From the IMG/VR virus record IMGVR_UViG_3300042922_000542, positions 182,148 through 246,147 of that record: a stretch of 64,000 bases of DNA. One strand, 5' to 3'. Position numbers and translations under genes: made by a program. This document shows, piece by piece, positions 13,994 through 64,000 of this stretch. Positions within the stretch are counted from its first letter, which is position 1. The number at the start of each line of letters is the position of its first letter. The notes below the pieces were generated by a model, which was given only the letters and a program-made list of their open reading frames with translations, was not told the origin of the DNA and ran no database searches.

Positions 13994-16900
13994 CTATCCT
14001 TCATAATTTTTTGGATACTTTATATCAATTATAGGACGATCTGCACTTGGTACAGGCATATCCATTATATTTTTTATTGCAGCTAATAATTGCGTTCTCA
14101 TATCTACCAGATATTGATAAGTATGAGGTACGATATAATTTTTAGTACCCACATCCAAAAGCTCAATATACCATTCAACAATTTCAAGTTTACCATATGC
14201 GTATGATACTATCATCATTTTATCATTAGCAGTTCTAATTGATTCACCCTCAATTGTTATATATGCTACAAGATCTGCTGGTATTTTCTTCAATCTTTTA
14301 ATTTTAACCTTTTCATTGAATACCATTTTATCTTCTATATATTTTTCACATTGTGCATATTCAAATCTGGATGTATATAATTCAATCTCTGTATCGAAAC
14401 CAGAATTATAGAATCTTTCTACGATTTGTGGTAGACTTTGCAATGATCGCACAGTCTCGGTATATGTGACATTAGTAGTTAATTGTGATATCAATGATTT
14501 TAAATCATGTATTATTTTTTTCTTAGACTTTTCAGGAGTTGGGTATGTCTCAACTATATCTGAAATGAATTTATTTACTTTATCAATTAATTCCATATCA
14601 GGGTTGAAAACCTTATTTACTTCTCCATCAACATCTCTGAATACGAGCAGCATACTTAATGTATATATAACGACACCATCGAGAGGTCCAATCAATAACT
14701 TCTTAGTAGGTGTATCGAATTTCATTAAATTCATTGCTATTTTTTCAGCACCTTTGTCTATATTACTATTATAGTATTTAATTGCATTCTCAAAACAATT
14801 TAAGAGATCGTCAGGTGTTTTAAATGTCTTAAATAATTTTTTAGATACTTTAATATTAATTGATCCGCTTCTTCGTAAAAACGTGGTAAATGTTTCATGG
14901 CCATTTATAAACCTATCAACAAATATATTATCGCCATTTTTCTTGATAGATAAATTAGGAGGTATAAATTCAAAATCAATATCACTTTTATCATTAGTAA
15001 ATCCAATTGATATAGCATCAAATTCACTTGCCCATTCTCGCAATGGACCTTCTGATATTAAATTAGCAATTGTATTTAATGTACTTTCACTAACCTTACC
15101 ACTTTTATCTATGATTGATTTGGCCAATGTTAATATGGTTTGCTTTGCGGTAGCAATCTTGGCTTTGTCAATTTTATTTAAGCCCATGGATTCCCCTCTA
15201 CCACCAGGAGTTTTAGTTAATCTATTATCCGGCTGTAAATACCAGCCACAGTTAACACATCTCGCTTGACCCCCACCATATGAGAATGAATGTTCACAAT
15301 TCTCTGGTGCGACAGAAAATGTAGATTCTATATATGGGGTTCCGTTATTAGCATAATCCCAAAGTTTCTTAGCCGCATCATCATCAAATCTGAGTTCAAA
15401 CATATCGATTCCATCATCGGGATCCCCACCAAGAACAATTGTTATACCAGGATATTTCTGTTGGAAATCAACCCTACCATCTTCAAATTCTCTATCAATT
15501 TCTTGAAGTAATAAATAAAGCTCATAATGTAAAAATCTATACGATTTTTGTTCATCCAGGGTCATCTTCTTATATAATTCATATTCCGCATCTTCAAAAT
15601 TAAAAGTTTGCTGTTGATCAGTTACGTATATAACTGCACTATATGAATTATTCTGTGGACTATGTGTAACACTACCACACCCTGTAATCGATGAATATAT
15701 ATATTTCTCGATCTCATCAATTATATGTTTTTCGGATAGTCTACTATATTCAGATTTTTTCACTTTATCCTTGATCTTGGTTAGAATTTGCTTATTTAGA
15801 TCATCAACAAGTGTTGAAATAATTGGTGGTAAGTTATCCTTTGATATGTTAATAGTCTTAGGTTTATTGCTATTATCATTATTGGTAGTAAATATATTAA
15901 ATTTATTTTTAAAACTAGTATTATCAGATTTATGTTTAAGAAATTGCGCGCGCTTGATGTTATAGTTATTGATATCAACTGCTTCTGTTTTAATATGATT
16001 ATCCACTACATTACCACGATTTTTAAACTTATTCCATAATTGTTCAGCAATTTTATCTGATGGATAAACATCGTATCCTTCTAAATTATGCCCATCATTA
16101 AATTCATATTCCAATCTTAAATCATATTTTTTGGATATAATGGGTTTAACTTTATTAAATACTTCGGTGATTAATGTGTGGAATAAATGTGCTTGCGTAT
16201 CATTTCGATCATTTACAACATGTCCTGTAATCTGTATCATACATTGATACTTCCCACTTTCAGTTGGCCAAATTTGGACAGCTTTATTATCATCAATCTC
16301 TGATAATGGCGTACAAAATTTATCAATATATTCTTTACATTTTTCAGATGTTAAAACTGATTTATATTTATCAGTCCTAATCATATGCTGTAAAGTTTCA
16401 ACTATGAATTTATTAGTTTGATTTAATTTTATTTGAAAGACCATTGGTAAATCTTTACGTTGATTATACAACCTAGGTTCAGTTGCTTCATTATAGATAT
16501 TATTAATATTCATATCTATTATATTCTCCTTCCATTCATAAGATTCTTTTTGGATATCAGATGCACTTTCATTTGTTTGTTTCAATTTATTTATAATGTG
16601 GTCAAACTCAGATCGTCCCATTGTAATATATTCATAAATTTTAATAGTCTCATTTATTAAAAGAACTCTTTCTTCCATCGTAAGGGTTTTATTTAATCTT
16701 TTTTTCATAATAATAATTAATATTTCTTTAGGAATTTTATAAAATGCCAATTTACCATATGGCTCATCTTTCCAGTTTTTAGATGGCATAATATGATGCA
16801 TAATATTAATCATATCCATAAAGTCAATATGCATAATATCATTAGCGAGCTTTTCTGGTTTCAAATGATAGTATGCTGCACTTATATTGGATAATTCCTG

Positions 16901-17512
16901 ATCTCTCGCGTTAGCATTATTATCAATAACTGTATTTAATATTGTACCAAACATTCCATTCTTTATTTCATATTCAACACGATCATATATTGATATATCC
17001 TTAATTGTTAATATATGACCAATTTCATGAGATATTATTATTTTTAAATCATCTATTGTTTTATAATTAAACGCAATCATTTTTTTTATATTTATAATCA
17101 TGGCCGGAATACGATTAGTGTCATCTTTAAATTTATCAATATATTGCGATATATTTGTGGATTGACTTATATTATATTTATTCAAATCTTCAATTTTGAT
17201 AGATTTAATCATTATTTTTGCATCAGGATGCATTAGATTCGAGTCATCCTCAATAAATATAACTAGAATATTATATTTTCTAATAAATTCTTCGAGTATC
17301 ATTTTAATATCAGTTTCCGACAAATCAGGTGTCGTATATTTCGTTTTTTCATCATGTATTGTCTTATTATTTAATTTATTATTTAATTTATTATTTATTT
17401 CAATAATTTTCAATGGAGATTTAATCAAATTTTGCATTAATATATCCATATTTTGTAAATTAATTAATAAATCAATATCATTTTTATTTATATGATTTAA
17501 TGCGTTATTCAT
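13994..17512 (-). CDS. multidomain putative head protein with N-terminal zincin (HExxH) domain
   Basis: IISHEIGH...PEKLAND; repeated xxE-S/A motifs; CEH...CVNC; lies directly downstream of the major capsid gene. Confidence 0.65.
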   Translation of the reverse strand: MNNALNHINKNDIDLLINLQNMDILMQNLIKSPLKIIEINNKLNNKLNNKTIHDEKTKYTTPDLSETDIKMILEEFIRKYNILVIFIEDDSNLMHPDAKIMIKSIKIEDLNKYNISQSTNISQYIDKFKDDTNRIPAMIINIKKMIAFNYKTIDDLKIIISHEIGHILTIKDISIYDRVEYEIKNGMFGTILNTVIDNNANARDQELSNISAAYYHLKPEKLANDIMHIDFMDMINIMHHIMPSKNWKDEPYGKLAFYKIPKEILIIIMKKRLNKTLTMEERVLLINETIKIYEYITMGRSEFDHIINKLKQTNESASDIQKESYEWKENIIDMNINNIYNEATEPRLYNQRKDLPMVFQIKLNQTNKFIVETLQHMIRTDKYKSVLTSEKCKEYIDKFCTPLSEIDDNKAVQIWPTESGKYQCMIQITGHVVNDRNDTQAHLFHTLITEVFNKVKPIISKKYDLRLEYEFNDGHNLEGYDVYPSDKIAEQLWNKFKNRGNVVDNHIKTEAVDINNYNIKRAQFLKHKSDNTSFKNKFNIFTTNNDNSNKPKTINISKDNLPPIISTLVDDLNKQILTKIKDKVKKSEYSRLSEKHIIDEIEKYIYSSITGCGSVTHSPQNNSYSAVIYVTDQQQTFNFEDAEYELYKKMTLDEQKSYRFLHYELYLLLQEIDREFEDGRVDFQQKYPGITIVLGGDPDDGIDMFELRFDDDAAKKLWDYANNGTPYIESTFSVAPENCEHSFSYGGGQARCVNCGWYLQPDNRLTKTPGGRGESMGLNKIDKAKIATAKQTILTLAKSIIDKSGKVSESTLNTIANLISEGPLREWASEFDAISIGFTNDKSDIDFEFIPPNLSIKKNGDNIFVDRFINGHETFTTFLRRSGSINIKVSKKLFKTFKTPDDLLNCFENAIKYYNSNIDKGAEKIAMNLMKFDTPTKKLLIGPLDGVVIYTLSMLLVFRDVDGEVNKVFNPDMELIDKVNKFISDIVETYPTPEKSKKKIIHDLKSLISQLTTNVTYTETVRSLQSLPQIVERFYNSGFDTEIELYTSRFEYAQCEKYIEDKMVFNEKVKIKRLKKIPADLVAYITIEGESIRTANDKMMIVSYAYGKLEIVEWYIELLDVGTKNYIVPHTYQYLVDMRTQLLAAIKNIMDMPVPSADRPIIDIKYPKNYEG

Positions 17513-17602: not shown

Positions 17603-17623
17603 TTATATAATTAAAGAGGTGTA

Positions 17624-19411
17624 TTAAACAACTTCACCATATACATCAGCACTGTTAAGCATAACAAGTCTTGCCTGAATACCTTGAACAGAGATATCTT
17701 TGTATCTGCTTGTTGCAGTAACAATTGTATATGCTCCGCCAGGTCTATTAGTTGACTCGTACGCTGTTTGACTTTGTGAAGTCATTAAGTGTGAAGTATA
17801 TTTTAAGTGTTTGAAAGAAATATGTTCGTCATCAGTTGGGTAAGCATAGATTCTAAGAACAAGTTCTTTCTTATTTGTTGGAGCTACAGCTGCATCTGTA
17901 TATGCTTTATATACGTTTGATGCAACAACTCTAACCGGTGCACTCATATCTGTTGCAAAACCATATGAGTTGTTTACAGTGATACCACCAACTGATGCTC
18001 CCTGTTGGTAGTTCCATGTTGTCCATTTAGAAATAAGTTGGCAAGCCATTGGGTTACCAGCGATAACAAAGCTTAAGTTATCCAATTTAGCAGCTTCACA
18101 GAGTTTGTATATCAAACCTTTGATGGCAAATTGAACTGCATTTGCTTTGTATATAAATGGATCTCCAGCAAATCCAACCGGTGCTTTAAGATCAACCACA
18201 TGTTCCTGAACAAGTGATTCCAATTTATAGATGTCAGATTTAGTTCCAGCATATTTCTTATATTCATCATCAAGGAATCTAAGAACATTTTGTCCCTCTA
18301 TCATTTCTTGTGTCTTAACTATTTCATCAACCATTCTGTTGTAATAATTAATATCAAGTAATGCAGCAGCATCTTCGATTTCTTCTATTGAGAAAGGCAT
18401 ATTCCATCTTGCACCGTCTTCAATTGTGAATTTTATCAATTCACGTTTTTCTCTAACAGATACAGTTCTTGTATTTAATTCATTTGATAAATATCCTTCG
18501 AATACAACCCCAGTAACTTGAGCGTTGCAAGCAGATACATTAACAGTACCTTTTTTGAAATCAATTTTACCAGATACGCTATCTTTGATTATGGTTCCAT
18601 CATCTGCAACGAAATCAAGATCGCCATTTACAAATGTACCGCCAGTTGAGAATTCAACAGTAATGCCGTTTCCTTTAAGTTTATAAATTTTAGTAGCAAC
18701 TTCAACAGCAACAATTTTGATATTGTATGATAATCTATCTTGACCAGGTATTCCATCAGTAAGATTGTCAATGATATCATATTGATAAGCTGGTACTGCA
18801 ACTACAGTATCTTTTATTACATGACCTTTAGCAGCATCCCAAATCTTTTCCCATGTTCCATCAAATATACATTTTGGATATTCATACTCGTCACCAGTTG
18901 TATTGTCAACAAGATATGTAGTCTTAATGTGTTTTGCAAGGTTAGGAGTCTTAGTAGTTTCCACTTCAATAACATCTTTTATTATTGATTGGAAGAACTG
19001 TTTAGCAAGAGTTGGAAACTCTAATGTAGCGATCGGTAAGAATGAAAGTGTTGAAGCTGATTCATTGTAACTTCTAACTTTAGCATCCCAAAGTCTTTCA
19101 ACGTTTTCAACAAAGCTTTCAATGTGAGGGTCATTTGCAGATGCATTTCTGAATCCCTCGTATATTGGCTGTAATAGGTCTACCTTGTATGATTCCATAA
19201 ATGCTTTGTCGCCTACCATTGCACCTAAGTCACGTTTAATATCAATACCTACGCGGCTTTTGTAAGATTCATATAACTCATTAAAATTTTCCTGGAATGA
19301 TTTCCCAGATCTTGACACCTCAAATGAACTGCGTGAATTTGCAAGGTTTGGTGTTATTGTACCAGCGGATTCTCCGAACCAAGATCCGTTATTATTTCTT
19401 TGATAACTCAT
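17624..19411 (-). CDS. major capsid protein precursor
   Basis: 595 aa; strongly biased codon usage; own late promoter and terminator; ES-rich N-terminal propeptide; jumbo-phage MCP-like SIEEIEDAAAL and IAGNPMACQLI. Confidence 0.75.
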   Translation of the reverse strand: MSYQRNNNGSWFGESAGTITPNLANSRSSFEVSRSGKSFQENFNELYESYKSRVGIDIKRDLGAMVGDKAFMESYKVDLLQPIYEGFRNASANDPHIESFVENVERLWDAKVRSYNESASTLSFLPIATLEFPTLAKQFFQSIIKDVIEVETTKTPNLAKHIKTTYLVDNTTGDEYEYPKCIFDGTWEKIWDAAKGHVIKDTVVAVPAYQYDIIDNLTDGIPGQDRLSYNIKIVAVEVATKIYKLKGNGITVEFSTGGTFVNGDLDFVADDGTIIKDSVSGKIDFKKGTVNVSACNAQVTGVVFEGYLSNELNTRTVSVREKRELIKFTIEDGARWNMPFSIEEIEDAAALLDINYYNRMVDEIVKTQEMIEGQNVLRFLDDEYKKYAGTKSDIYKLESLVQEHVVDLKAPVGFAGDPFIYKANAVQFAIKGLIYKLCEAAKLDNLSFVIAGNPMACQLISKWTTWNYQQGASVGGITVNNSYGFATDMSAPVRVVASNVYKAYTDAAVAPTNKKELVLRIYAYPTDDEHISFKHLKYTSHLMTSQSQTAYESTNRPGGAYTIVTATSRYKDISVQGIQARLVMLNSADVYGEVV

Positions 19412-19511: not shown

Positions 19512-20051
19512 CTATTGCTTTATATTCTTCTCAAAGTTCTTATCTAATAAATTTAATAAATTAAAGCACTTATTGAAAAATAATAAATTTCTAGAATAAT
19601 TGTTATTAATAAAGTTATATGACAAATAAAGGTTAATATTATCACGCAACTTTTTTAATGAATCAATAATACCTAGTGCATTTGGTGATAATGAGTATAT
19701 GATATCGTTATTATCTTTTATTAATGATATGTGATCCGTTATTACACTGATCAGTGATAAAAATTTTTTATAAAGATTTTCATTCATAACAGCTGATATT
19801 TTCTCATTGATATCTAGATTTTCTGATTCATCTTCTATATTATCTTCAGCACCAGTACCATCACCAATATCAGGAAAATCTTCTAATTCAGGTGGTGGTT
19901 CATCAAGAGGTGTATCGTCAGGTTGGGTATCAACTTCGTCTACTCCGATATCAGGGGGACCTTCATTATTAATATTACCATCATTCGATATGTCATCCCC
20001 TTCGGCTTCGAATAATACCCTCTCAAATAAACTAGGCATATTAAGCATCAC
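19512..20051 (-). CDS. putative head/scaffold-associated protein
   Basis: Very acidic, Pro-rich N-terminal half after LFEAE; helical C-terminus; lies upstream of the major capsid gene. Confidence 0.6.
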   Translation of the reverse strand: MMLNMPSLFERVLFEAEGDDISNDGNINNEGPPDIGVDEVDTQPDDTPLDEPPPELEDFPDIGDGTGAEDNIEDESENLDINEKISAVMNENLYKKFLSLISVITDHISLIKDNNDIIYSLSPNALGIIDSLKKLRDNINLYLSYNFINNNYSRNLLFFNKCFNLLNLLDKNFEKNIKQ

Positions 20052-20104: not shown

Positions 20105-22855
20105 TTAGATGATTCTAGCAATTTTCTTACCGCCGTCGACACGAAGTAATTTTTTAGTCACTTCACGTTTAATTCTAATTAATTGATATTTTGCAGTATT
20201 ATCACCATTGTTCGCAGCATCTTTAATCTTCTCATCTATAATTTCGAGTTCGGCTTTTAATTCACCGATCATCTCATTACGAATACGAAATTGATTTTTA
20301 TCATTAGTGATTTTGTTGGTGATAGCTAAAAACATAAATACTGGATTGAATAGTAATTTAGCTTTTAATAAAGAGCCGGTCATGATAGCATTCCTAATGG
20401 CTCTATATAAATTCTGCCTTGAACGAGGATCTGCCATTTTTTCTTTCATTTGATTCTCATTCAAATCTTTCCATTGATTAAGCATACCATTTATCCATCC
20501 AACGGTACGAGTTGTTGGTTTCATAAATGTTTTACCAACATTAATTGCACTCTGCACAGTCTTTTTTATTTCCTGTTGCTTTCCACTTAAATTCCTGTCA
20601 ATATCCATCAATGTATCTCTTATCGGATGATCCGATTCTGGTTTAGCAGGTTCTTCAGTTGATTCGATAATCACATCAAATATACTATCGGAATTTGATT
20701 CATTATCGTTTAATAATGGTTCTATATCATCAGAATTGATGATCGATGATTCATTGAATACTTGATTATTTAAAAATGCTTTAGCACTCATAATCATTTG
20801 TACTTCTATGACAGCATATTTTTGTAAAGCTTCATATGCAGTATCATATATACCATCAACATCATCATCTTCATTCATATCCTCAGGACCTTTAGATACC
20901 AACTTAGCATTTATTATATATCGCCAAATTCCACCATTATCATCTCCGGGCAAATCATCACCAAGGTCAACTATTGCAAATGAAATATCATTGGTTGATA
21001 ATTTTTTAAGTGCATTATTAAGTTTAACGATGTTTGATTTTTGAATAACACCTGTTAACATATCGCCTACAAATATTAATGTATCCTCATTATGCATCTC
21101 TTTTTTATCGCCGGCCCAACCGAAATAAGCTTTAATTGGTTCTTCGATTTCAACGCCACCATCAGTGGATTTATAGAAATATTTTAAAATACTATCTGAA
21201 TCAATATTGTCAAAGTGTGTTTGGAAATATTTGCTGGCTAATTCAATATATGGTTTAAGATTCTTTATTGTAGTACCAATTATTTTTGATACCATTTCAC
21301 ATACATATTTGGCCTCTTTTTTAGTCATTACAGCAGCATATGTTATCACACCAACTATTCCAATACCAAATATTACGATGGGTGCAAACAATGTTATCAT
21401 AATTAATGTGGATAATATTGTCATGATAGCACCTTCACTCATAGGTTTAGGTTGAACATCAATACCATCCATTATATCAATAGAAAACATGTCAGTTGAT
21501 TCAGTCTTTGTTTCATCAGATTTGGTATCAACATTATATGACAATGTCGAATGTGTTGAATGATCATCATTACGATGTTTATTAAATGAATTATTATAAG
21601 TATAATAATAATTATTAACTTGACCATCATGTTTTAACGACGGTTTAGAATCATCGTCAACCTTGTCATTATCTTTAACAATAATTTTAGCTGGCGTAAT
21701 ATCATCAGGCACTGGTTGTTTGATATAATCTGTTGGTTTTAAATCAGCATTAATCTCTGTCTCTGGTGCGATAGTAGATTGTTGATCATTATCATCTTCG
21801 CCATATGATAAAATTTGATGCTGTTTCAGATAATCTGGTAATTTACCATATTTTTTATCCCTAGTAGATTCAATTAATCCAGGAATATCTTGTTTAGATA
21901 ATACTTTTTTACTAACAGTTGTTGGGGGTAGCATATCAACGATATCAGCACATGATTCATTTTCAGGAAGTAAACCATCAAATTCTTCATATATCGATAT
22001 TATGTCATCTTCGATTGCTTTGATATCATCAAAATTCTCCAACGTAGTCATATAATATTCTTTAAATGAAATATAATCATGCATATGATTAATTTCTTCT
22101 TCAGTATACTCAATGAATTTCTCTTCATCCATCAGAACTGATTCTTTATGGAGAATAGCATTTTTTAATTTAATTGATTTGACAATACCCTCTAATGACT
22201 CTTCTGTGAATTTCTTTTTTAAGGTATTTAATTTGTCGGAAGGTGATTTAATATCCTTTGATGCTTCCAGCAGCCATTGATATAAGGTTGGATTACCATC
22301 AGAACTATTAACAGCTTCTGATAAAAATTGAAATACTATATCAGCCTTATTATTTCTTTCAGCTGTAATGATAACATCGGGAATCGCAGCTTCACCAAAT
22401 TGAGATAATACCTTAGGTATATTTGAATTGAAATATTCATTATAGTATAATTTAGTATATTCATCATGAGATGCATCCAGTTCATCTTTATATGCCTCAA
22501 ACATAATAAATGAATTTTTATATTCATTCTTAAATGACTCCAACATTTCTTTAGATTCATTATAAATACTAGAATCAATACCACGGTATTTACACTGTTT
22601 GATAGCATTGTCAAATGATTCCATAATACTATCATATTTAATTAACGGGATACCATATTTTTCAATAAATTCTCTAAATGTTTTTACACCATGATTAGAT
22701 GTAATTATATATTCTAGATTTGATGCATAAAGATATGGATCATTTTGTAGAGAATTATTTACGGCTTCAATGTAATTATTAATATCAGATTGCAAGCCTG
22801 AAGATTTAGCTGATTGATACAATAATTTTATATCTTTCAAATTAATCAACTCCAT
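20105..22855 (-). CDS. large putative internal head protein
   Basis: More than 10 xxE-S/A motifs, an internal hydrophobic segment and a C-terminal coiled coil; CACA-N6-TA at 22887-22898. Confidence 0.6.
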   Translation of the reverse strand: MELINLKDIKLLYQSAKSSGLQSDINNYIEAVNNSLQNDPYLYASNLEYIITSNHGVKTFREFIEKYGIPLIKYDSIMESFDNAIKQCKYRGIDSSIYNESKEMLESFKNEYKNSFIMFEAYKDELDASHDEYTKLYYNEYFNSNIPKVLSQFGEAAIPDVIITAERNNKADIVFQFLSEAVNSSDGNPTLYQWLLEASKDIKSPSDKLNTLKKKFTEESLEGIVKSIKLKNAILHKESVLMDEEKFIEYTEEEINHMHDYISFKEYYMTTLENFDDIKAIEDDIISIYEEFDGLLPENESCADIVDMLPPTTVSKKVLSKQDIPGLIESTRDKKYGKLPDYLKQHQILSYGEDDNDQQSTIAPETEINADLKPTDYIKQPVPDDITPAKIIVKDNDKVDDDSKPSLKHDGQVNNYYYTYNNSFNKHRNDDHSTHSTLSYNVDTKSDETKTESTDMFSIDIMDGIDVQPKPMSEGAIMTILSTLIMITLFAPIVIFGIGIVGVITYAAVMTKKEAKYVCEMVSKIIGTTIKNLKPYIELASKYFQTHFDNIDSDSILKYFYKSTDGGVEIEEPIKAYFGWAGDKKEMHNEDTLIFVGDMLTGVIQKSNIVKLNNALKKLSTNDISFAIVDLGDDLPGDDNGGIWRYIINAKLVSKGPEDMNEDDDVDGIYDTAYEALQKYAVIEVQMIMSAKAFLNNQVFNESSIINSDDIEPLLNDNESNSDSIFDVIIESTEEPAKPESDHPIRDTLMDIDRNLSGKQQEIKKTVQSAINVGKTFMKPTTRTVGWINGMLNQWKDLNENQMKEKMADPRSRQNLYRAIRNAIMTGSLLKAKLLFNPVFMFLAITNKITNDKNQFRIRNEMIGELKAELEIIDEKIKDAANNGDNTAKYQLIRIKREVTKKLLRVDGGKKIARII

Positions 22856-46231: not shown

Positions 46232-48505
46232 TTACTTCTTGGCTATCAATTCAATTTCTTCACTGCTAATAGTTTTATCTTTTGTTTGCTGTTTTAAAGT
46301 CATTTGATTTGCTTCAATTCTGATTGCTTCAGCTATTGTATCCATTTTGCCATAGTCTAGTTGAGGTAAGTATTCTTCAGCTAATTTACGTTTTAATACT
46401 ATTGCTAGATTTGAAGGTTTACCATCTTCAGTTTCCAATTCTTTTTGAGAGAAATAAATATTACTTACCAATTCAGCCAATACATTATAATCACTAATCA
46501 TTTGATTTGTAATATTTAATGTCGGCTGTTTAATAGTATTAAACTTAAATAAGAATGAATTTATTTCAGCATCACCAATATTACTATTGTATTTCATTAG
46601 TATCTTATACATATTCGTCAATGAATGATTAAAATCGATTTTATATGATGATACTGTTGATAAATACCTGGTGTTTGCTAATTCTAATGTCTTTGCAAAA
46701 TCAACATCATCTAATGCATTTATAACCATCAACGCTGGAACTCCAGTACCAGATATGGCCTGACGGCGTTGTTGTTCTAAGAACTCTGTATCTATAGGTT
46801 TGTCAACTGCAGAAATGGTATCAGTTTCAATCGCCTTATAATCACCACGACCTGATGGGAGTACCATTTCTCCCATACCACCGACTTTATTTATTACACC
46901 GCTATATGAATATATATCGTCGATAGTAATTCTTCTAGATTGGAACTTCCTCATTGCACGCTGAACTTGTGAAGCATAATCTTTATTTAATCCTGATGAT
47001 TTTAAATAATGTATACGAGTCGTATTATTATTCAATGTGTATAGCATATTGTATGCTGTTAATAGCATATACATTCTTGCAGGAAATAATGATGGTTCAA
47101 TTATAGAATGACCTTTACCATTTTCATCTTCATTTATTATAAATCTAACAACTTCGTTTTCAGGAATAAATACAAATGACAGACGACTCTCTGCAAATTT
47201 ATGACTCATAACAATATCTGCAATCTCACTCTTTAATTCAATATTATTATCTAACATTTTTTTATCAAAAGATCTTATTATAATTTCAGCAAGTGAATTT
47301 ACAACTTGTTTATCTCTAGTATAATGAGCTATTGATACATCAACGACCCCATTAGGCTGTATAGGATTTGTTTTGGAATTAACTTTCGATGAAGCATAAC
47401 AGTAACCAATTACGCGTCTATCAATTCGAACAGGTATGATTCTAAGAGGATCTAGATATTTAATATAGCATCCTTTGATATGATTATATTTTTTATATGG
47501 GATATCGCCCGGTTCAATATCTTTTTCTAATTTTTCATAATCATCATATCCATTAATAACACTCTCAAAAAATGAGACATCGGTATTAGACTTAAATACG
47601 CCATCTCTTTCTTTTTCTAATAATGTGCTTAAACCCGGTGCACCTAATTCTTGTAATAGCACAGTAGATCCATCTGGATATACAGATATATTTTTTAACA
47701 ATATATCTATATCGGCACTATCAACTTTAGCATCCTTAATTTTACTACTACCATCATCCTTATATTCACTCACAATTTTGATAGTGTCGTTAGAAACACT
47801 TTCCTTGATACATTTTATATTTTCTTCATTGTCTATAGAATACTCTATTGATTTAGTAGTGGATTCAGTTAACGATGTCTTACTTCTATTTGTCGATGAT
47901 TTTGCGTTTAATTTTCTATTATATGCATCCAATTCCGCAAATAGTTTACTGTATGGAACTATGTTTACATAAAATTCTCCACCCATTAGTGTTTGGGGTA
48001 TTATAAAATTTTTTATTGCTTTTTGTAAATCAAATTGTTTTTCAAGCTCTTTGACAATAGTTTGATTATCGGCAGCTTCAGAATTCTGAAATATAAGAGA
48101 TCTGGCAATTTCACCGGTTACAACATCGGACTCTATAATGGAATCTCTAACTGTAAATATTACATCACGCATTTCAGGCATTTGAGTGCAAATATTAAAT
48201 ATGTCTCGCTTAAGTAGTATTTCGTTAGTATTGATGCTATTAATTCCAGCATGATCTGTTTTAATTTCATTGAGGATACGTTTTATCATATCCGAATCAT
48301 TTTTATTTCCTGTCGTAAAATCAGAGAAACGTCTAATAAATCCATCTTTATCAAAATTAGATGAATTAAAATCTTCTATATTATCTTTAAGGATCTTATA
48401 GAAACTTTGATTAAGTTCCTTTAATTCATTACTCTCAAGATTTCCTACATCTGATGCAATATCATCGGATAATCGTTGCATTATATCCTCTTTATTAGTT
48501 GGCAT
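46232..48505 (-). CDS. portal protein
   Basis: T4-gp20-like pattern: PEMRDVIFTVRDSII, GEFYV, GHSIIEPSLFPARMY..TRIHY, AISGTGVP. Confidence 0.8.
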   Translation of the reverse strand: MPTNKEDIMQRLSDDIASDVGNLESNELKELNQSFYKILKDNIEDFNSSNFDKDGFIRRFSDFTTGNKNDSDMIKRILNEIKTDHAGINSINTNEILLKRDIFNICTQMPEMRDVIFTVRDSIIESDVVTGEIARSLIFQNSEAADNQTIVKELEKQFDLQKAIKNFIIPQTLMGGEFYVNIVPYSKLFAELDAYNRKLNAKSSTNRSKTSLTESTTKSIEYSIDNEENIKCIKESVSNDTIKIVSEYKDDGSSKIKDAKVDSADIDILLKNISVYPDGSTVLLQELGAPGLSTLLEKERDGVFKSNTDVSFFESVINGYDDYEKLEKDIEPGDIPYKKYNHIKGCYIKYLDPLRIIPVRIDRRVIGYCYASSKVNSKTNPIQPNGVVDVSIAHYTRDKQVVNSLAEIIIRSFDKKMLDNNIELKSEIADIVMSHKFAESRLSFVFIPENEVVRFIINEDENGKGHSIIEPSLFPARMYMLLTAYNMLYTLNNNTTRIHYLKSSGLNKDYASQVQRAMRKFQSRRITIDDIYSYSGVINKVGGMGEMVLPSGRGDYKAIETDTISAVDKPIDTEFLEQQRRQAISGTGVPALMVINALDDVDFAKTLELANTRYLSTVSSYKIDFNHSLTNMYKILMKYNSNIGDAEINSFLFKFNTIKQPTLNITNQMISDYNVLAELVSNIYFSQKELETEDGKPSNLAIVLKRKLAEEYLPQLDYGKMDTIAEAIRIEANQMTLKQQTKDKTISSEEIELIAKK

Positions 48506-48593: not shown

Positions 48594-49460
48594 CTATATA
48601 TGTTTTTTAATGTTTTCTTTTAGATCTAATATACCTTTATTAAGCTTATCCAATTTATCCATAAGCTTCATTTTCGCATCAGCTGGGTCATCAGCAACTG
48701 GAGTAGATTCAACATCATTTACCTTATCGATGACAGTATTTGTTAAATCATTCGTATCTTCAACTTTGCCATCATCTGTAGCAGCATCTTTATTGATGGA
48801 ATCGTCAGTTTTTGATGTATCAGCCGCATCTATATTAATAGACTCTGTAAAGATATCTGCGGGAAGTTTTTTACCCTTATGATTTTGCAATAAGATATAA
48901 CCGACATTTTCACCTTTACCATTATTTTTATAACTCAAACGAAATATAGCAGCCTCACGAACGGTAAGTTTTTGACCATTTATCAGCTTATTTTGAATAT
49001 CTTTTAAATATGATTTGTCATCATTATAATTAGTACAAAGTAAATTTGCATATTCCTCTTCACTGAGTGCAAGAGTTGATGCTTCAGTGAATCCGTCATC
49101 AATTTCGGCATCCAATATATCATTAGATATTATTACATCTTTGGCATTCACTGGTGGGACTGGCAATACATCTGTTAACGTGTTTGTCTTACTATCAATT
49201 GTTACATTTAACAAATCACAAATGTCAGTTAGATCTTCAGCCGACTTATCCTCAATCGTATCATCTTCCACAGGTTGAGTTTTTACAGGTTCAATAGTTT
49301 CTGGATCTTTAGTATCAGTATCATCTAATACAATATCATCCCCATCTTCATCTTCAGTTATATATTTCTCTATGTCATCCATTACATCTTCATATATAAC
49401 TGCAGCTGATTCTAAAAATTCCTCTTTTTGTTCAATCATGCTTTTAATTGTTTTTAACAT
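48594..49460 (-). CDS. acidic putative head/scaffold protein
   Basis: FLESAA, FTEAS and FTESI motifs; adjacent to portal; late promoter. Confidence 0.6.
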   Translation of the reverse strand: MLKTIKSMIEQKEEFLESAAVIYEDVMDDIEKYITEDEDGDDIVLDDTDTKDPETIEPVKTQPVEDDTIEDKSAEDLTDICDLLNVTIDSKTNTLTDVLPVPPVNAKDVIISNDILDAEIDDGFTEASTLALSEEEYANLLCTNYNDDKSYLKDIQNKLINGQKLTVREAAIFRLSYKNNGKGENVGYILLQNHKGKKLPADIFTESINIDAADTSKTDDSINKDAATDDGKVEDTNDLTNTVIDKVNDVESTPVADDPADAKMKLMDKLDKLNKGILDLKENIKKHI

Positions 49461-51756: not shown

Positions 51757-54351
51757 ATGAAAACATTTAATATGTGCAATTTGAATCAATCAATATTGCC
51801 ATTAATCCAAAAAGGTAACACACTAAAATATGAAATTATTAAAAATAAAGTATTTTCGAAACCTATTAACAAATCAGAAATATCACTGTTTAAAAATTCA
51901 CTAGATGCTTTTCTTAATGAATGGACAGGATACACTGTTGAAATTAAGAATGCATTGATCGATGCAAAAAATATTGAAGCAACTGCTGGTAATCGAGTAT
52001 TAGAATATGATTATGCCAAAAAATTTATATTTAGTAAATGCGACTATGAATCAGTTTATGATTTACTGGATGGTATAATGCAAGGGATTAATGACAATAA
52101 TATGCAGAAGCCATCCCATGTGAAGTTATATTTTCAACACATGCTCGATATGGCATTCAAAACAGAATCAACTTCAATTAGTGAATTGATTGATTCACGC
52201 TCTTATAAGATCTTTAATTTATATTATTCAAATATAAATTTATATGAGATAAAAATGTTTAACAGTATCCGTACATATGATGATATGTTTAATAGAGAAG
52301 ATCGAATTGACATATATAAGTCAGCATGTGATGTATTGGATATTATACTTAAATCCGATTTACAAAAGCCTCTCCATAGTGCTATGGGTAAATTTGCGGA
52401 TCAGTATAATTCATCAAAAATGTGGACTGCAATAATATCTCATGTTATAGATTATATCATCTATACTGCTGCTGAATATGCATCTAGAATATATGTTATT
52501 GGTACATATATAAATACGTTTAAAGGTCCATCAGTGGTTACTGAATCTACGAATAATACTATGATTGGATTAGATTCAATGGAAGTATCTGAAGATGTCA
52601 GTGCAGGTGATCTTTCTAGTATATGTAAAACTACTGATGAATTATTAGTTCGTGATATTAATGAAAATTTAACAGTGTTTGGCCGCTATAATGAATTCTT
52701 AACGTTAATCGGAGTTCAAAACATATCACCAGACAATATACATCAAATAACACCAAATGAGAATAATAAAATAATAGATAGCATTAAGTATAATGATGTT
52801 ATTAAATTAATACAATCTGCATATTTTAATGGTGAGGACTATTATGGTCAAAATAATAAATTAAATGAGTTTCATCATAATTTAAAGTATTTATTGACAA
52901 ATCCATTACATGGATTGGCTAGTAGTGAAAATCCAAAAAATGAAATATTACATTTAATTCGTAAAAATGATTATTATGGTCAGCCTAAGACTATTGCTAC
53001 ATACACAAAATTGGCTGAAGATTTATATTATGCAAGTATATATTTATCCAGAATAATTATTCAAGCAATGAATGAACTCAGGACGGTATCAAATGTAGTA
53101 TCAAATACAAATGATATAAACCCTCGTTTGCCAAGAAGAAATGGAGGAATTAATCTAATCGGAGAGAAAAAACATATCGACGAATGTTCATCTTTACTTT
53201 TAGGGCTATATAAAGAATTAATGGTGGCAGTGCATCAGAAATTTATGTATATCGAGTCATGTATAAATAATATTCATAATATCAATAATAAAGATTTGGA
53301 AACTAAATTTGATTTAAATGATCCAATTATATCTAATCGAGAATTAGCCGGTATAACGTCAATAGCTGTACCAGAAACATTAAGAATTCCAATGAGCTCA
53401 CAGGATCTATTTGTATTGACTACATTTGAAGAAGCTTGTTTAGAAAATGAAATTCTTAGATTAACACCTGGATTCGAAAATAGTTTATATTTAAGCGAAG
53501 CTGGTGGTTCAAAAATTATTGAAATGGTGATCAGTTTAGTGCAAGGATTGACTAACTCAGCATCAATATTTTTCTTTAAGAATTTTAAACCTGCTTCACA
53601 ATGGGTTATCAAAAATAAAGATACCCTATTGAAAATGAATTTTTCTAAAGATGATACGATATCAAATGTATACAAATATAATTTAGATATTAAATCTGAT
53701 GATACAATAAATGGAATAAGTATTAAACAATTACGTGATACATTAAAGAATTTTAATGAAGAAGAAGTTGCTAAAGATCCAGGTAAATGGATATCATCAT
53801 TATATCCAAGTGAAGAAATATACGAGTGGTTTAAAGCTGATGAGAAAACTGCAGCAATAAAATATCAGAATAAAATATTATTTGGTACAGATTCGGATAA
53901 GCCAACTGCACGAATAGAATTATCTGGAGCTGAATTGAAAACTGAATTTGATTCATGGGTAAATGATATGACGCATGCTGATACAATTGCAAAATTATTG
54001 GTTGACTATGCTAAAGCTATCGATATAGCTATCAAAGATATTAAAAAGAAAGCAATAGTTGAATCTGCTATAATTGAAGCAACCGGTGATGAACCACCAA
54101 TAATGGATACAAATGATAAAAAGGATCCGAATAATAAAGTAGATGATCCTAAAGTACAGATAAATGGAAATGCATCAACCGTTCCATTGAACGAAATAAC
54201 ATCTGTCATTTCAAGAACATGGAAACCATTATTCAGTGGAATTATACAAATCTTTACTGATGAATATAAAAATATAAAGGCTATATATCAACAAAGCATA
54301 ATAAGTAATACTGATAAACAAGATGATGCTAAACAAAATACTCCTAAATAA
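51757..54351 (+). CDS. large putative virion (internal head) protein
   Basis: VTEST, YLSEAG followed by an amphipathic helix, IVESAIIEAT. Confidence 0.6.
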   Translation: MKTFNMCNLNQSILPLIQKGNTLKYEIIKNKVFSKPINKSEISLFKNSLDAFLNEWTGYTVEIKNALIDAKNIEATAGNRVLEYDYAKKFIFSKCDYESVYDLLDGIMQGINDNNMQKPSHVKLYFQHMLDMAFKTESTSISELIDSRSYKIFNLYYSNINLYEIKMFNSIRTYDDMFNREDRIDIYKSACDVLDIILKSDLQKPLHSAMGKFADQYNSSKMWTAIISHVIDYIIYTAAEYASRIYVIGTYINTFKGPSVVTESTNNTMIGLDSMEVSEDVSAGDLSSICKTTDELLVRDINENLTVFGRYNEFLTLIGVQNISPDNIHQITPNENNKIIDSIKYNDVIKLIQSAYFNGEDYYGQNNKLNEFHHNLKYLLTNPLHGLASSENPKNEILHLIRKNDYYGQPKTIATYTKLAEDLYYASIYLSRIIIQAMNELRTVSNVVSNTNDINPRLPRRNGGINLIGEKKHIDECSSLLLGLYKELMVAVHQKFMYIESCINNIHNINNKDLETKFDLNDPIISNRELAGITSIAVPETLRIPMSSQDLFVLTTFEEACLENEILRLTPGFENSLYLSEAGGSKIIEMVISLVQGLTNSASIFFFKNFKPASQWVIKNKDTLLKMNFSKDDTISNVYKYNLDIKSDDTINGISIKQLRDTLKNFNEEEVAKDPGKWISSLYPSEEIYEWFKADEKTAAIKYQNKILFGTDSDKPTARIELSGAELKTEFDSWVNDMTHADTIAKLLVDYAKAIDIAIKDIKKKAIVESAIIEATGDEPPIMDTNDKKDPNNKVDDPKVQINGNASTVPLNEITSVISRTWKPLFSGIIQIFTDEYKNIKAIYQQSIISNTDKQDDAKQNTPK

Positions 54352-61782: not shown

Positions 61783-61844
61783 TTATATAACACTCTCCCC
61801 TTCACATTTATAATATATCGTTAATTTATTAAAGGGAATAAAAA

Positions 61845-61879
61845 AAATAAATGAGGGGATTAAAACCCCTCATTTATTT
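61845..61879 (-). terminator. intrinsic terminator
   Basis: AAATAAATGAGGGG/CCCCTCATTTATTT. Confidence 0.8.
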
Positions 61880-62057
61880 CTCTTGGTATATCATTAATAT
61901 TTTTTACTACTCGTTTTATACGGGGTGCAGTCCAGCTATGTGATAATCCATGTTCTTTATCACATATGATCTCACGATCAGTTACGAATTTGGTATCATA
62001 TTGATCAAGATCATCAGATGTTATGGTATCCGGTTTATCATCATTAATCATTTCCAT
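61860..62057 (-). CDS. small hypothetical protein
   Basis: GGAGG SD. Confidence 0.65.
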   Translation of the reverse strand: MEMINDDKPDTITSDDLDQYDTKFVTDREIICDKEHGLSHSWTAPRIKRVVKNINDIPREINEGF

Positions 62058-62106
62058 AATTAATTACCTCCCTATTTATATTAATATAATATATAATTTG
62101 GGGATG

Positions 62107-63543: not shown

Positions 63544-64000
63544 TCTGTCAATGTTGATTCATTAATAACAATGCCTTTCCCTAAACGAAGTCTTGTTGTA
63601 TATTCATTCAGTGATGCACCTTTTTGTCTAAACATATCATCAAACTGATTCAATGTAGATTCTCTTATTGCTAATCCAATAGTTTCATCTTGGGATCCAA
63701 CATCTTGTGAATTTTTCATAGACCATTCTGATATATAATCCATTGCAACTTTAAAACTGGAGGATTCAGTTTTAATATTAAAGGACATATCACTCTCATC
63801 CTTCTTATCTTTTAACAACTCAGAAATATCAGCAACAATTTTATTTACAGTTTTCTTCTTTAATTTTTCAATAAAATCTTCATATTCAACGTCTTTCTTA
63901 ACATCAATAAGCTGATTTTCCATATCATCATCTTGATCAGAAATCGGTTCAGGTGGGACATCTAAACCATCATCAGCATCTTCTTTTAATTTTTCCATAG
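63522..64000 (-). CDS. 3' part of a putative head protein (probably begins beyond the window)
   Basis: Acidic, with KTESS, IREST and INEST motifs. Confidence 0.7.
   Translation of the reverse strand, partial: MEKLKEDADDGLDVPPEPISDQDDDMENQLIDVKKDVEYEDFIEKLKKKTVNKIVADISELLKDKKDESDMSFNIKTESSSFKVAMDYISEWSMKNSQDVGSQDETIGLAIRESTLNQFDDMFRQKGASLNEYTTRLRLGKGIVINESTLTECATNFI

What the first reader, a model, noticed from the sequence alone, without database searches (positions are those of the whole stretch)
13994..64000. Window-wide hydrophobic-x-E|S/A motif marks a modular, protease-released capsid cargo system
Seen: motifs such as YNES, FTES, IMES, VTES, LFES, INES, IIES, FLES and LSEA cluster in the major capsid N-terminus, the portal insertion and ORFs 13994, 20105, 28833, 39715, 41967, 44488, 45551, 48594, 51757, 62107 and 63522. 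By eye they are rarer in the sheath, helicases, RNase H and phosphatase. In the large ORFs they fall at apparent domain boundaries. Established: T4 gp21 and phiKZ gp175 prohead proteases cut after Glu in short motifs and process many internal head proteins. Inference: this phage strings exchangeable effector domains between cleavage sites, so head maturation releases a toolkit of enzymes for ejection. The protease gene was not recognised in this window.
Basis: partly seen in the sequence, partly recalled or inferred. Interest (0 to 1): 0.82.

Follow-up and report, generated by a model that had tools for sequence, protein, structure and literature searches.

The report
Head-protease cut sites mark phage polyproteins
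A short motif (bulky hydrophobic residue, any residue, Glu, then Ser or Ala) is truly over-represented in the head genes of this uncultured 246-kb phage; it is most likely the cutting site of the phage's own T4-type head-maturation protease, whose gene lies 10 kb outside the window, and in two large mosaic proteins the sites bracket swappable domains.

Summary
[FILVYM]xE[SA] occurs 97 times in 53 window ORFs against 51 expected (z 6.5). Among 749 comparable patterns, hydrophobic-x-E-S ranks first. Reversed, shifted and Asp/Gln/Lys controls are flat, and the enrichment recurs in every related phage locus fetched.

The excess sits in specific places: the first 117 residues of the major capsid protein, a portal linker (one site kept in 45 of 46 portals), a scaffold-like protein, four fast-evolving small proteins beside the portal gene, and two large proteins flanking the capsid gene. 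Sheath, terminase, helicases and RNase H are at expectation.

It is a Peptidase_S77 (T4 gp21-like) gene 10 kb left of the window, and its family is the most motif-rich of all.

The "modular cargo" reading is partly supported. ORF 20105 belongs to a family of over 900 clusters with a fixed C-terminal domain that avoids the motif, a near-invariant site just before that domain, and a variable motif-rich N-terminal part. In relatives that part carries NUDIX cassettes bracketed by sites. The ORF 13994 family carries zincin and SUKH modules.

Most sites in the window, however, lie in ordinary propeptides. No cleavage, packaging or ejection has been measured.

The parts
17624..19411 (-). Major capsid protein precursor (595 aa), with a predicted propeptide of residues 1-117
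   Evidence: PHROG major head protein 9e-27, aligned from residue 120. AR9 capsid protein homologue. Four sites lie in residues 12-118.
19058..19069 (-). Predicted capsid maturation site Y115-N-E117|S118, directly before the conserved FLPIATLEFP block
   Evidence: Y-[TSN]-E-S is present at the homologous position in nearly all capsid orthologues.
19367..19378 (-). Capsid N-terminal site F12-G-E14|S15
   Evidence: F-[YG]-E-[SA] is conserved near residues 8-24 in the orthologues.
19512..20051 (-). Small protein with an acidic N-terminal half and a helix-rich-looking C-terminal half, scaffold-like by position. It has one conserved site, L13-F-E15|A16
   Evidence: It lies between ORF 20105 and the capsid gene. 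A hydrophobic-x-E-A site occurs at residues 9-25 in all 11 orthologues, 14 vs 5.9 overall. Sequence.
20105..22855 (-). 916-aa mosaic head polyprotein candidate: N-terminal region with many sites, variable middle, conserved C-terminal domain
   Evidence: 11 sites vs 2.9 expected. Orthologues give 64 vs 25. The family has 908 clusters with the domain always C-terminal.
22262..22774 (-). Cluster of eight sites in residues 28-198 of ORF 20105
   Evidence: 7 sites in a 120-aa span, none of 2000 shuffles reaching that. Six of the eight keep hydrophobic-x-E in L004.
20660..20671 (-). Junction site I729-I-E731|S732 just before the C-terminal domain
   Evidence: A site lies within 20 aa upstream of the domain in 8 of 10 orthologues against 2.4 expected. 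Hydrophobic-x-E lies within 20 aa in 96 of 110 family members, 65 of them at a fixed spacing.
20108..20659 (-). Conserved C-terminal domain of ORF 20105 after the junction cut (about 184 aa), depleted of the motif
   Evidence: 9 sites vs 49.8 expected over 139 family members. Alignment A6.
13994..17512 (-). 1172-aa mosaic protein: HExxH module (1-342), module B (353-559), its tandem copy (560-785), conserved C-terminal domain (789-1172)
   Evidence: Module map from BLAST against relatives. Orthologues are 389-894 aa long and share only the C-terminal domain. Family sites 40 vs 14.7.
17015..17029 (-). H162-E-I-G-H166 zincin-type metal-binding signature in ORF 13994
   Evidence: Read from the sequence. 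Pfam finds no family. AR9 has a gene annotated 'zincin protease' at the syntenic position.
16484..16495 (-). Site Y340-N-E342|A343 between the HExxH module and module B
   Evidence: The confident AlphaFold segment of module B starts at residue 347. BLAST modules end at 312 and start at 353.
46232..48505 (-). Portal protein (757 aa)
   Evidence: AR9 g128 portal homologue, 1.6e-34. 212 homologues at E <= 1e-10, one of them named portal protein by its source.
47798..47872 (-). Portal site cluster, residues 212-236 (LTE|S, IKE|S), in a variable linker
   Evidence: [IL]-x-E|S-V is present in 45 of 46 portals, and F-[RK]-E|S in 31 of 46. Residues 202-222 have low confidence in the model.
39715..40530 (-). 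271-aa fast-evolving protein with a predicted propeptide of residues 1-115
   Evidence: 5 sites vs 1.1 expected. Orthologues at about 27% identity give 17 vs 5.1. The alignment shows a conserved N-terminal leader ending in a site, a spacer of variable length, and 2-3 sites just before the conserved C-terminal domain.
44488..45462 (-). 324-aa fast-evolving protein with four sites in residues 23-75
   Evidence: 6 vs 1.5 expected. Orthologues 24 vs 7.2. Alignment.
45551..46171 (-). 206-aa protein with a site (ITE|A, residues 106-109) just before its conserved C-terminal domain
   Evidence: PHROG 'virion structural protein' 2e-5. Orthologues 13 vs 3.3. Alignment.
48594..49460 (-). 288-aa acidic protein with a conserved 17-residue N-terminal leader ending F-L-E|S
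   Evidence: 4 vs 0.8 expected. The leader and its site are conserved in all five family members.
51757..54351 (+). 864-aa protein with mild enrichment; its status as a substrate is uncertain
   Evidence: 6 vs 2.5 expected, p 0.03. Relatives 46 vs 28.3. No family hit.

Best explanation
The window is the last 64 kb of a 246-kb uncultured jumbo phage. Its capsid, portal, sheath, tube and terminase genes are distantly related to Bacillus phage AR9/PBS1.

The tetrapeptide (bulky hydrophobic, mainly F/Y/L/M) - x - Glu | (Ser/Ala preferred) is most likely the recognition site of the phage's own T4 gp21-type serine prohead protease (Peptidase_S77). That gene lies 10 kb to the left of the window.

During head maturation the protease would do the following.
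- Remove and shred N-terminal propeptides of the major capsid protein (cut after Glu117), the portal (cuts around residues 212-236), a scaffold-like protein, and several fast-evolving internal head proteins encoded next to the portal gene.
- Trim itself after its catalytic domain.
- Cut two large mosaic proteins that flank the capsid gene (ORFs 20105 and 13994).

Each mosaic protein has a conserved, motif-poor C-terminal domain preceded by a conserved site. Upstream of that site is a variable, site-rich region into which whole domains have been inserted between sites. These are NUDIX hydrolase in relatives of ORF 20105, and SUKH-5 and a zincin-type module in the ORF 13994 family.

Shown here: the enrichment, its specificity, its conservation, its positions, the protease gene, and the domain swaps.

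Inferred: that the protease cuts these sites, that the proteins are in the head, and that any released domain is delivered to the host.
For: Enrichment and specificity.
- 97 vs 51.2 sites. The pattern ranks first of 749 and all controls are flat.
- It replicates in 14 of 14 related loci.

Enrichment is confined to particular orthologue families, even at 25-30% identity.
- Enriched families: 39715, 17 vs 5.1; 44488, 24 vs 7.2; 45551, 13 vs 3.3; 48594, 17 vs 7.7; 20105, 64 vs 25; 13994, 40 vs 15.
- Control families: sheath 3 vs 8.9; terminase 12 vs 13; DnaB helicase 14 vs 12.

Positionally conserved sites.
- Capsid protein Y-x-E|S directly before the conserved core.
- Portal [IL]-x-E|S-V in 45 of 46 portals.
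- N-terminal leaders ending in a site.
- 11 of 53 window ORFs have a site in their first 30 residues against 4.0 expected.

The protease.
- An S77 HMM scores 1.8e-32 on L061:10022-10885. This is contig position 171,222-172,085, and the window starts at 182,148.
- The GEIDHP and FSARV blocks, which align with the blocks of AR9-type S77 proteases thought to hold the catalytic His and Ser, are conserved.
- The protease family has the strongest enrichment of all, 49 vs 10. Conserved sites lie right after the catalytic domain. This matches the known C-terminal self-cleavage of SPN3US gp245 and phiKZ gp175 (PMC5694885, PMC10052503).

Mosaic proteins.
- 908 family members carry the domain at the extreme C-terminus and are 87-1758 aa long.
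- The N-terminal parts give 1142 vs 334 sites; the C-terminal domain gives 9 vs 49.8.
- A junction site is present in 96 of 110 members.
- A 184-191-aa NUDIX cassette is bracketed by F-x-E|S at five different positions.
- The SUKH_5 insert (2.2e-13) lies between two sites.
- Inter-site fragment lengths are bimodal compared with random placement.
Against: - No proteomic or biochemical datum exists for this phage or any member of its clade. Cleavage, packaging and ejection are all inferred.
- P1' is not strict. At conserved positions it is also D, E, K, R, Q, C or T, so some counted sites may not be cut and some real sites are not counted.
- The window's own ORF 13994 has only 3 sites against 2.6 expected, and no site within 20 aa of its C-terminal domain.
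- Orthologue counts are not independent events.
- The folds and functions of the conserved C-terminal domains, and of most inserted modules, could not be identified.
- The HExxH module is not confirmed by any profile.
Confidence: 0.75

Rival explanations
1. The sites are real prohead-protease sites, but they only mark disposable propeptides and scaffold or core proteins. These would be shredded and expelled, as happens to T4 gp22, gp67 and gp68. On this view nothing is released as functional cargo, and the variable regions of ORFs 20105 and 13994 are fast-evolving filler.
For: - Eight sites within 170 residues of ORF 20105, and 4-5 sites within about 100 residues of 39715 and 44488, would yield short peptides.
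- Fragments of 10-20 aa are in excess.
- ORF 20105 sits where T4 keeps its core and scaffold genes, upstream of a scaffold-like gene and the capsid gene.
- This is the documented behaviour in T4 and SPN3US (PMC5694885, PMC10052503).
- No enzyme domain is recognised in ORF 20105 of the window.
Against: - Complete NUDIX and SUKH-5 domains sit between sites in relatives, with bracketing sites conserved as part of the cassette.
- Fragments longer than 160 aa are in excess and fragments of 80-160 aa are in deficit relative to random placement.
- A folded enzyme domain is an odd choice for filler.
Confidence: 0.3
2. The sites are cut by the zincin-type metalloprotease module of ORF 13994 (autoprocessing of polyvalent proteins, as proposed by Iyer et al. 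2017), not by the serine prohead protease.
For: - An HExxH signature lies in ORF 13994, next to the capsid gene.
- AR9 has a gene annotated 'zincin protease' at the syntenic place.
- Zincin peptidase domains are the hub domain of polyvalent proteins and are predicted to autoprocess (PMC5512222).
Against: - Some relatives lack the N-terminal region altogether (the L004 and L007 orthologues are 389 aa, C-terminal domain only), yet their genomes keep the motif enrichment and the conserved capsid and portal sites.
- Cutting after Glu with a P3 determinant is the documented signature of the gp21/gp175/gp245 protease lineage (PMC10052503, PMC5694885).
- The S77 protease family itself carries the densest and best-conserved sites.
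Confidence: 0.04
3. The enrichment is a by-product of composition or secondary structure (acidic, helix-rich, low-complexity proteins) and has no function as a site.
For: Motif-rich proteins are acidic and look helix-rich. Shuffles ignore local structure.
Against: - The reversed motif, Asp, Gln or Lys at P1, and P3 shifted by one residue are all at expectation in the same proteins.
- Individual sites are conserved inside otherwise variable segments.
- The conserved C-terminal domain is five-fold depleted.
- The protease family is the most enriched.
Confidence: 0.02

Closest known systems
Bacteriophage T4 head maturation by gp21 (Peptidase_S77): cuts after Glu in (L/I)-x-E motifs, N-terminal capsid-targeting leaders on internal proteins, shredding of core proteins
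   Same: - A protease of the same Pfam family is present.
- Glu at P1 and a hydrophobic P3.
- A multiply cut capsid propeptide.
- Short N-terminal leaders ending in a site.
- A site-rich protein encoded upstream of the scaffold-like and capsid genes.
The T4 facts are taken from PMC5694885 and from general knowledge.
   Different: - P3 here favours F, Y, L and M rather than L and I.
- The portal carries a conserved site cluster. T4 gp20 is not among the gp21 substrates listed in PMC5694885.
- Substrates include 900-1700-aa mosaic proteins with a C-terminal conserved domain.
phiKZ gp175 / SPN3US gp245 / 201phi2-1 giant-phage prohead proteases (MEROPS S80) and their substrates
   Same: - Long N-terminal propeptides (20-254 aa), including those of the portal and the capsid protein.
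- Several cuts per propeptide.
- A preference for Ser at P1'.
- C-terminal self-cleavage of the protease.
- Many internal or ejection proteins among the substrates (PMC10052503).
   Different: - The motif there is A-x-E or S/A/G-x-E. That pattern is not enriched here (z -2.0).
- No Pfam phiKZ internal-head-protein family is detected.
- The protease here scores as S77 of the AR9 type.
Polyvalent proteins of phages and conjugative elements (Iyer, Burroughs, Anand, de Souza, Aravind 2017, PMC5512222)
   Same: - Large multi-module proteins encoded among virion genes.
- A zincin-type HExxH module.
- Conflict-type domains (NUDIX, SUKH) swapped between relatives.
- A predicted release of domains by proteolysis.
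   Different: - Release there is proposed to be autoproteolytic, through the zincin domain.
- Here the modules are bracketed by the head protease's own motif, and the proteins end in a fixed C-terminal domain.
- SUKH is not mentioned in that paper.
- Membership is not established for the window ORFs.
Herpesvirus assemblin (same protease fold as gp21)
   Same: Hydrophobic P3 and Ser at P1' (assemblin cuts (V/L/I)-x-A|S; recalled from general knowledge, not tested here).
   Different: P1 is Ala there and Glu here. Assemblin acts only on itself and on the scaffold protein.

Membership tests
gp21/gp175-type prohead-protease maturation system | A gp21-family serine protease gene in the same genome | tested here: met
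   L061:10022-10885 is contig position 171,222-172,085 of the window's own contig. S77 HMM 1.8e-32. It is not inside the window: HMM and profile-profile searches of all window ORFs were negative.
gp21/gp175-type prohead-protease maturation system | Conserved sequence blocks around the catalytic His and Ser | tested here: met
   GEIDHP and FSARV are invariant in seven clade proteases and present in the window genome's copy. They align with the AR9-type GEAGHP and FSMRG blocks. Assignment of the catalytic residues is by homology. The third catalytic residue was not examined.
gp21/gp175-type prohead-protease maturation system | A short motif ending in Glu, enriched in head proteins and absent from or at expectation in tail and replication proteins | tested here: met
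gp21/gp175-type prohead-protease maturation system | A site at the boundary between the propeptide and the mature capsid protein | tested here: met
   Y-x-E|S at residues 115-118, conserved and directly before the region that aligns to capsid profiles. This is a sequence inference only.
gp21/gp175-type prohead-protease maturation system | A self-cleavage site after the catalytic domain of the protease | tested here: met
   Conserved I-Q-E|S / L-T-E|S and L-C-E|S downstream of the catalytic domain. Family total 49 vs 10. This is a sequence inference only.
gp21/gp175-type prohead-protease maturation system | Substrates actually cut in virions | not testable with these tools
   There is no cultured member and no proteome.
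Polyvalent proteins (PMC5512222) | Two or more distinct effector-type domains in one polypeptide | tested here: inconclusive
   Window ORF 13994 has an HExxH module plus three unidentified modules. Relatives carry NUDIX or SUKH_5. No single protein was seen with two recognised effector domains.
Polyvalent proteins (PMC5512222) | A zincin-like metallopeptidase domain | tested here: inconclusive
   HEIGH at residues 162-166. There is no Pfam, PDB or fold support, and the AlphaFold confidence for this part is low.
Polyvalent proteins (PMC5512222) | Encoded among virion, portal or terminase genes | tested here: met
   The gene order is 20105, scaffold-like gene, capsid, 13994, then three small opposite-strand ORFs, terminase, sheath, tube. 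The order capsid, 13994/zincin, terminase, g125 homologue, sheath, tube is collinear with AR9.
Polyvalent proteins (PMC5512222) | [quoted passage not shown] | not testable with these tools
   -
phiKZ-like internal head proteins (Pfam phiKZ_IP) | A match to the family profile | tested here: not met
   No Pfam hit at E <= 0.01 for 20105, 39715, 41967, 44488, 45551 or 48594. The only trace is a weak structural lead (TM 0.41).
T4-type capsid-targeting leader | A short N-terminal peptide ending in the protease motif | tested here: met
   11 of 53 ORFs have a site within the first 30 residues against 4.0 expected, p 0.0005. The leader is conserved in the 48594, 39715 and 19512 families. A targeting function was not tested.

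The most novel reading that the evidence does not exclude
ORF 20105 represents a widespread family (over 900 clusters at 50% identity) of head polyproteins built as a delivery platform. Each has a conserved N-terminal region, a fixed C-terminal domain that resists the protease and may anchor the protein in the prohead, and between them a hypervariable slot. Whole conflict-type domains (NUDIX hydrolase; in the sister family SUKH immunity-type and zincin modules; many unknown ones) are inserted into that slot as cassettes that bring their own prohead-protease sites. Head maturation would then turn one gene product into several free proteins inside the capsid, ready for injection.
Probability: 0.4. 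Interest if true: 0.75.

Novelty: new variant of a known kind. Interest (0 to 1): 0.6.

Why it matters
Prohead-protease motifs have been mapped by mass spectrometry in only a few phages (T4, phiKZ, 201phi2-1, SPN3US). Here the motif, its substrates and the protease of a large uncultured clade can be read from sequence alone. That gives predicted mature ends for the capsid protein, the portal and the internal proteins.

If the cassette reading is right, it links two ideas that have been treated separately: head maturation proteolysis, and multi-domain 'polyvalent' effector proteins. It would also give a simple rule (domain between two F/Y/L/M-x-E|S sites, upstream of a fixed C-terminal domain) for finding injected phage proteins of unknown function in metagenomes.

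The prediction can be tested directly with a recombinant protease and substrates.

Tried and rejected
- ORF 20105 as the portal: rejected. AR9 portal homology belongs to 46232.
- ORF 19512, ORF 25330, or the truncated ORF 63522 as the protease: rejected. 25330 is a beta-propeller repeat protein. 63522 is the C-terminal 158 aa of a 288-aa protein completed from a Logan contig, and only its tail aligns weakly to the S77 profile.
- Protease inside the window: phmmer with the AR9 exons, an S77 HMM built from 38 sequences, and hhalign against every window ORF family were all negative.
- Walking the contig with exact-protein look-ups: judged too costly. It was replaced by finding the protease in relatives and scanning back.
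- A repeated k-mer to fish out the rest of the contig: none found.
- Function of the conserved C-terminal domains and of the variable middle of ORF 20105: Pfam, PHROGs, PDB sequence search, ESM Atlas, and AlphaFold plus Foldseek gave nothing usable.
- The AlphaFold portal model was mediocre (pLDDT 59.5). It is used only for the low-confidence linker.
- phiKZ-type [SAG]xE motif: not enriched.
- ORF 28833 as cargo: not established. It has 7 sites vs 4.1 and lies among replication genes. One of its modules does recur in a 20105-family protein of L008.
- Megablast of the window against cultured phages: no match.
- tRNA and Rfam scans: empty.
- Read laying and the look-up of sequencing runs were not used, because reads cannot show protein cleavage.

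Full report
WHAT THE WINDOW IS

The window is the last 64 kb (contig positions 182,148-246,147) of JGI contig Ga0456363_0000124, also held as IMGVR_UViG_3300042922_000542. The contig is 246,147 bp long with about 30% G+C. No cultured phage matches it at the DNA level.

At the protein level its capsid protein is 22-24% identical to those of Bacillus phage AR9/PBS1 and the Staphylococcus jumbo phages. phmmer against AR9 proteins, together with Pfam and a Fusobacterium phage comparison, assigns these genes:
- Portal: 46232-48505.
- Sheath: 7255-9666.
- AR9 g125 homologue: 9751-10470.
- Tail tube: 6179-7255.
- Large terminase: 10545-12698.
- RNA polymerase beta fragment: 2931-5249.

The gene order capsid, ORF 13994, terminase, g125 homologue, sheath, tube is collinear with AR9. 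More than 200 portal homologues at 50% identity or more exist in metagenomes, so this is a large uncultured clade.

IS THE MOTIF REAL?

[FILVYM]xE[SA] occurs 97 times in the 53 ORFs of 100 aa or more. Within-protein shuffles give 51.2 +/- 7.0.

I scored all 749 patterns of the form (P3 hydrophobic or not) - x - (P1 residue) - (P1' residue) that had an expectation of at least 3.
- Hydrophobic-x-E-S is the single most enriched (61 vs 30, z 6.0).
- Hydrophobic-x-E-A is also high (z 3.4).
- The reversed motif, Asp/Gln/Lys at P1, P3 moved by one residue, a non-hydrophobic P3, and the phiKZ-type [SAG]xE are all at or below expectation.

So this is not a composition or helix-periodicity effect.

The 'rare' set (sheath, two helicases, RNase H, phosphatase) gives 8 vs 5.8, which is expectation rather than depletion.

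I fetched about 60 loci from related phages.
- All 14 loci large enough to test show the enrichment, with flat controls.
- The enrichment follows orthologue families even at 25-30% identity.

WHERE THE SITES ARE

Capsid protein. Two sites are conserved.
- F-x-E|S lies near residue 14.
- Y-x-E|S at residues 115-118 lies immediately before the strongly conserved FLPIATLEFP block. This is also where the PHROG capsid profile starts to align.

Portal. The sites cluster in a variable linker at residues 212-236.
- Across 46 portals, [IL]-x-E|S-V is present in 45 and F-[RK]-E|S in 31.
- These portals average 2.6 motif matches in that 40-residue stretch, against 1.8 in the remaining 512 residues.
- The AlphaFold model has low confidence for residues 202-222.

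ORF 19512. This is an acidic, scaffold-like protein between ORF 20105 and the capsid gene. It has one site at residues 13-16, conserved in all 11 orthologues.

ORFs 39715, 44488, 45551 and 48594. They lie beside the portal gene and evolve fast. They share one plan: a conserved N-terminal leader ending in a site, a spacer of variable length, a cluster of 2-3 sites, then a conserved C-terminal domain.

N-terminal sites in general. Eleven of 53 window ORFs have a site within their first 30 residues, against 4.0 expected.

Refining the motif against control families shows that F, Y, L and M at P3 carry the signal, while I and V do not. Ser or Ala at P1' is preferred but not obligatory.

This is the pattern that mass spectrometry has established for T4 and for SPN3US, phiKZ and 201phi2-1 (PMC10052503, PMC5694885). 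That pattern comprises:
- Propeptides of 20-254 residues, including those of the portal and capsid proteins.
- Several cuts per propeptide.
- Short N-terminal targeting leaders.
- A preference for Ser at P1'.

THE PROTEASE

AR9 encodes a gp21-type protease (g114, interrupted by an intron) close to its capsid gene. Neither its exons, nor an HMM of 38 relatives (Pfam PF03420), nor profile-profile comparison finds anything in the window.

The HMM did hit ORFs of about 290 aa in related phages, 6-7 kb from the ORF 54463 homologue. An alignment of those ORFs, scanned back against the viral contigs, recovered the window's own contig.

The gene is L061:10022-10885, which is contig position 171,222-172,085. 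It encodes 287 aa, lies about 10 kb left of the window, and scores 1.8e-32 against the S77 HMM. It contains the GEIDHP and FSARV blocks.

It carries L-T-E|S just after the catalytic domain and L-C-E|S further on, both conserved in relatives. The protease family is the most motif-rich of all, at 49 vs 10. C-terminal self-cleavage at the enzyme's own motif is documented for gp245 and gp175 (PMC5694885, PMC10052503). The genes flanking the protease are also enriched.

THE LARGE ORFS AND THE 'MODULAR CARGO' IDEA

BLAST against relatives shows that ORFs 13994 and 20105 are mosaics.

ORF 13994 has four parts:
- An N-terminal module with an HEIGH signature (residues 1-342).
- A module at residues 353-559.
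- A tandem copy of that module at residues 560-785.
- A C-terminal domain (residues 789-1172), which is the only part shared by all orthologues. Those orthologues are 389-894 aa long.

The Y-N-E|A site at residues 340-343 lies 4 residues before the first confidently modelled residue of the next module. The HExxH module recurs inside 20105-family proteins of two relatives. A module of ORF 28833 does so in one relative.

Two pairs of near-identical relatives differ by clean insertions.
- One is 203 aa long and ends in I-F-N-E|S.
- The other is 136 aa long, is a SUKH_5 domain (PF14567, 2.2e-13), and lies between L-V-E|S and Y-Q-E|S.

A site lies within 20 aa upstream of the conserved C-terminal domain in 8 of 10 members of the 20105 family (2.4 expected) and in 5 of 7 members of the 13994 family (1.6 expected).

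An exhaustive profile search with the C-terminal domain of ORF 20105 found 908 cluster representatives. The domain is always at the extreme C-terminus, in proteins of 87-1758 aa. In 139 members with an N-terminal extension:
- The N-terminal part has 1142 sites against 334 expected.
- The C-terminal domain has 9 against 49.8.
- Hydrophobic-x-E lies within 20 residues of the conserved P-x-S-D-[HNQ]-P start in 96 of 110 members, and at a fixed 9-residue spacing in 65.

Pfam recognises NUDIX in 5 of the 39 longest members. In five proteins at five different positions, the NUDIX box sits in a fragment of 184-191 aa bracketed on both sides by conserved F-x-E|S sites. Distances between consecutive sites are bimodal compared with random placement. 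There is an excess at 10-20 aa and above 160 aa, and a deficit at 80-160 aa.

For the window itself the support is thinner.
- The eight N-terminal sites of ORF 20105 would give only peptides.
- Its 373-residue middle fragment has no recognisable function.
- ORF 13994 has only three sites.
- The zincin assignment rests on one signature.

WHAT IS SHOWN AND WHAT IS INFERRED

Shown:
- The enrichment, its specificity and its replication.
- Positional conservation of individual sites.
- Depletion of the motif in the conserved C-terminal domain.
- The protease gene in the same genome.
- Domain gain and loss between sites.

Inferred:
- That the S77 protease cuts these sites. This rests on the known Glu specificity of its relatives and on the enzyme's own conserved sites.
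- That the motif-bearing proteins are head components. This rests on gene neighbourhood, weak PHROG hits and analogy.
- That released modules are delivered to the host.

Caveats:
- Orthologue counts share ancestry.
- ORF starts in relatives were taken as the first start codon.
- P1' is looser than the counted motif.

COMPARISON AND VERDICT

The system works like T4 gp21 maturation, with a hydrophobic P3 and Glu at P1. It also works like the SPN3US/phiKZ giant-phage version, with long portal and capsid propeptides and many processed internal proteins. It is a member of that kind on every feature that sequence can test.

The mosaic proteins resemble the polyvalent proteins of Iyer et al. (PMC5512222). 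They differ in using the head protease's motif rather than autoproteolysis, and in ending with a fixed C-terminal domain.

I rate it a new variant of a known kind.

The nearest cultured carriers of the C-terminal domain are Fusobacterium phages JD-Fnp1/4/6/7. They show the same local gene order and have an S77 protease close by. They offer a possible experimental entry point and a hint about the host.

Noticed in passing
window 25330-26430 (-): A 366-aa protein made almost entirely of a repeat of about 40 residues (YYSTDGITWTQSNITTG...), which looks like a beta-propeller or BNR-type repeat. It has no family hit and no motif sites.
   Followed up: partly
window 10545-12698 (-) and 38152-39126 (+); L008, L011, L012: The large terminase is one ORF here, but in three relatives it is split into two ORFs (about 275 aa and about 450-500 aa) separated by 0.9-1.7 kb. 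This suggests an intron or a homing element, as in AR9, whose terminase is joined from five pieces. ORF 38152 is a paralogue of the terminase N-terminal half (25% identity).
   Followed up: partly
window 63522-63998 (-); L026:9156-10022: ORF 63522 is cut by the end of the JGI contig. A near-identical Logan contig (SRR35179700_19466, 72.5 kb) runs on past that end and shows the full protein is 288 aa, followed by ORFs of 939, 637 and 1248 aa and a 5'-3' exonuclease gene.
   Followed up: partly
L014:5727-8708 and L014:8660-9313: In one relative the 20105-type protein is split exactly at the junction. A 993-aa ORF lacks the C-terminal domain, and an overlapping 217-aa ORF carries it, with I-A-E|A at residue 28. 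This could be a frameshift, a sequencing error, or a real two-gene version.
   Followed up: no
window 20105-22855 (-), about residues 415-425 and 520-545: ORF 20105 and its family share a conserved low-complexity block (N-N-Y-Y-Y-Y-T-Y-N-N-S). The window copy also has a 25-residue hydrophobic, membrane-span-like stretch in its variable middle.
   Followed up: no
L065 (Fusobacterium phage JD-Fnp1, ON464759.1 23832-42287): The only cultured phages with the C-terminal domain of ORF 20105 are Fusobacterium nucleatum phages of about 180 kb (26% identity). They have the same local gene order and an S77 protease 4 kb away. Together with the 30% G+C this is a weak lead to a low-G+C host.
   Followed up: partly
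window 13253-13594 and 13621-13950 (+): Two adjacent small ORFs are paralogues (31% identity) on the strand opposite to the surrounding structural genes. No function was found.
   Followed up: no
window 49620-50660 (+): An Amidase_2 (N-acetylmuramoyl-L-alanine amidase) protein carries F-R-E|S at residues 9-12. The lysin might therefore have a cleavable N-terminal leader and be virion-associated, or the match may be chance.
   Followed up: no
window 28833-32648 (+): A 1271-aa protein with weak transglutaminase-like (residues 216-272) and P-loop/STAND NTPase (residues 684-808) matches, plus a PHROG of unknown function (residues 885-1080). Its residues 350-679 recur inside a 20105-family head protein of relative L008.
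   Followed up: partly
L061 (contig 161,201-182,076): genes at 7069-8925, 8950-10002 and 10888-11451: The genes flanking the protease just outside the window are also motif-rich (relatives 52 vs 21.7 and 51 vs 20.0). They are probably further head or core proteins.
   Followed up: partly
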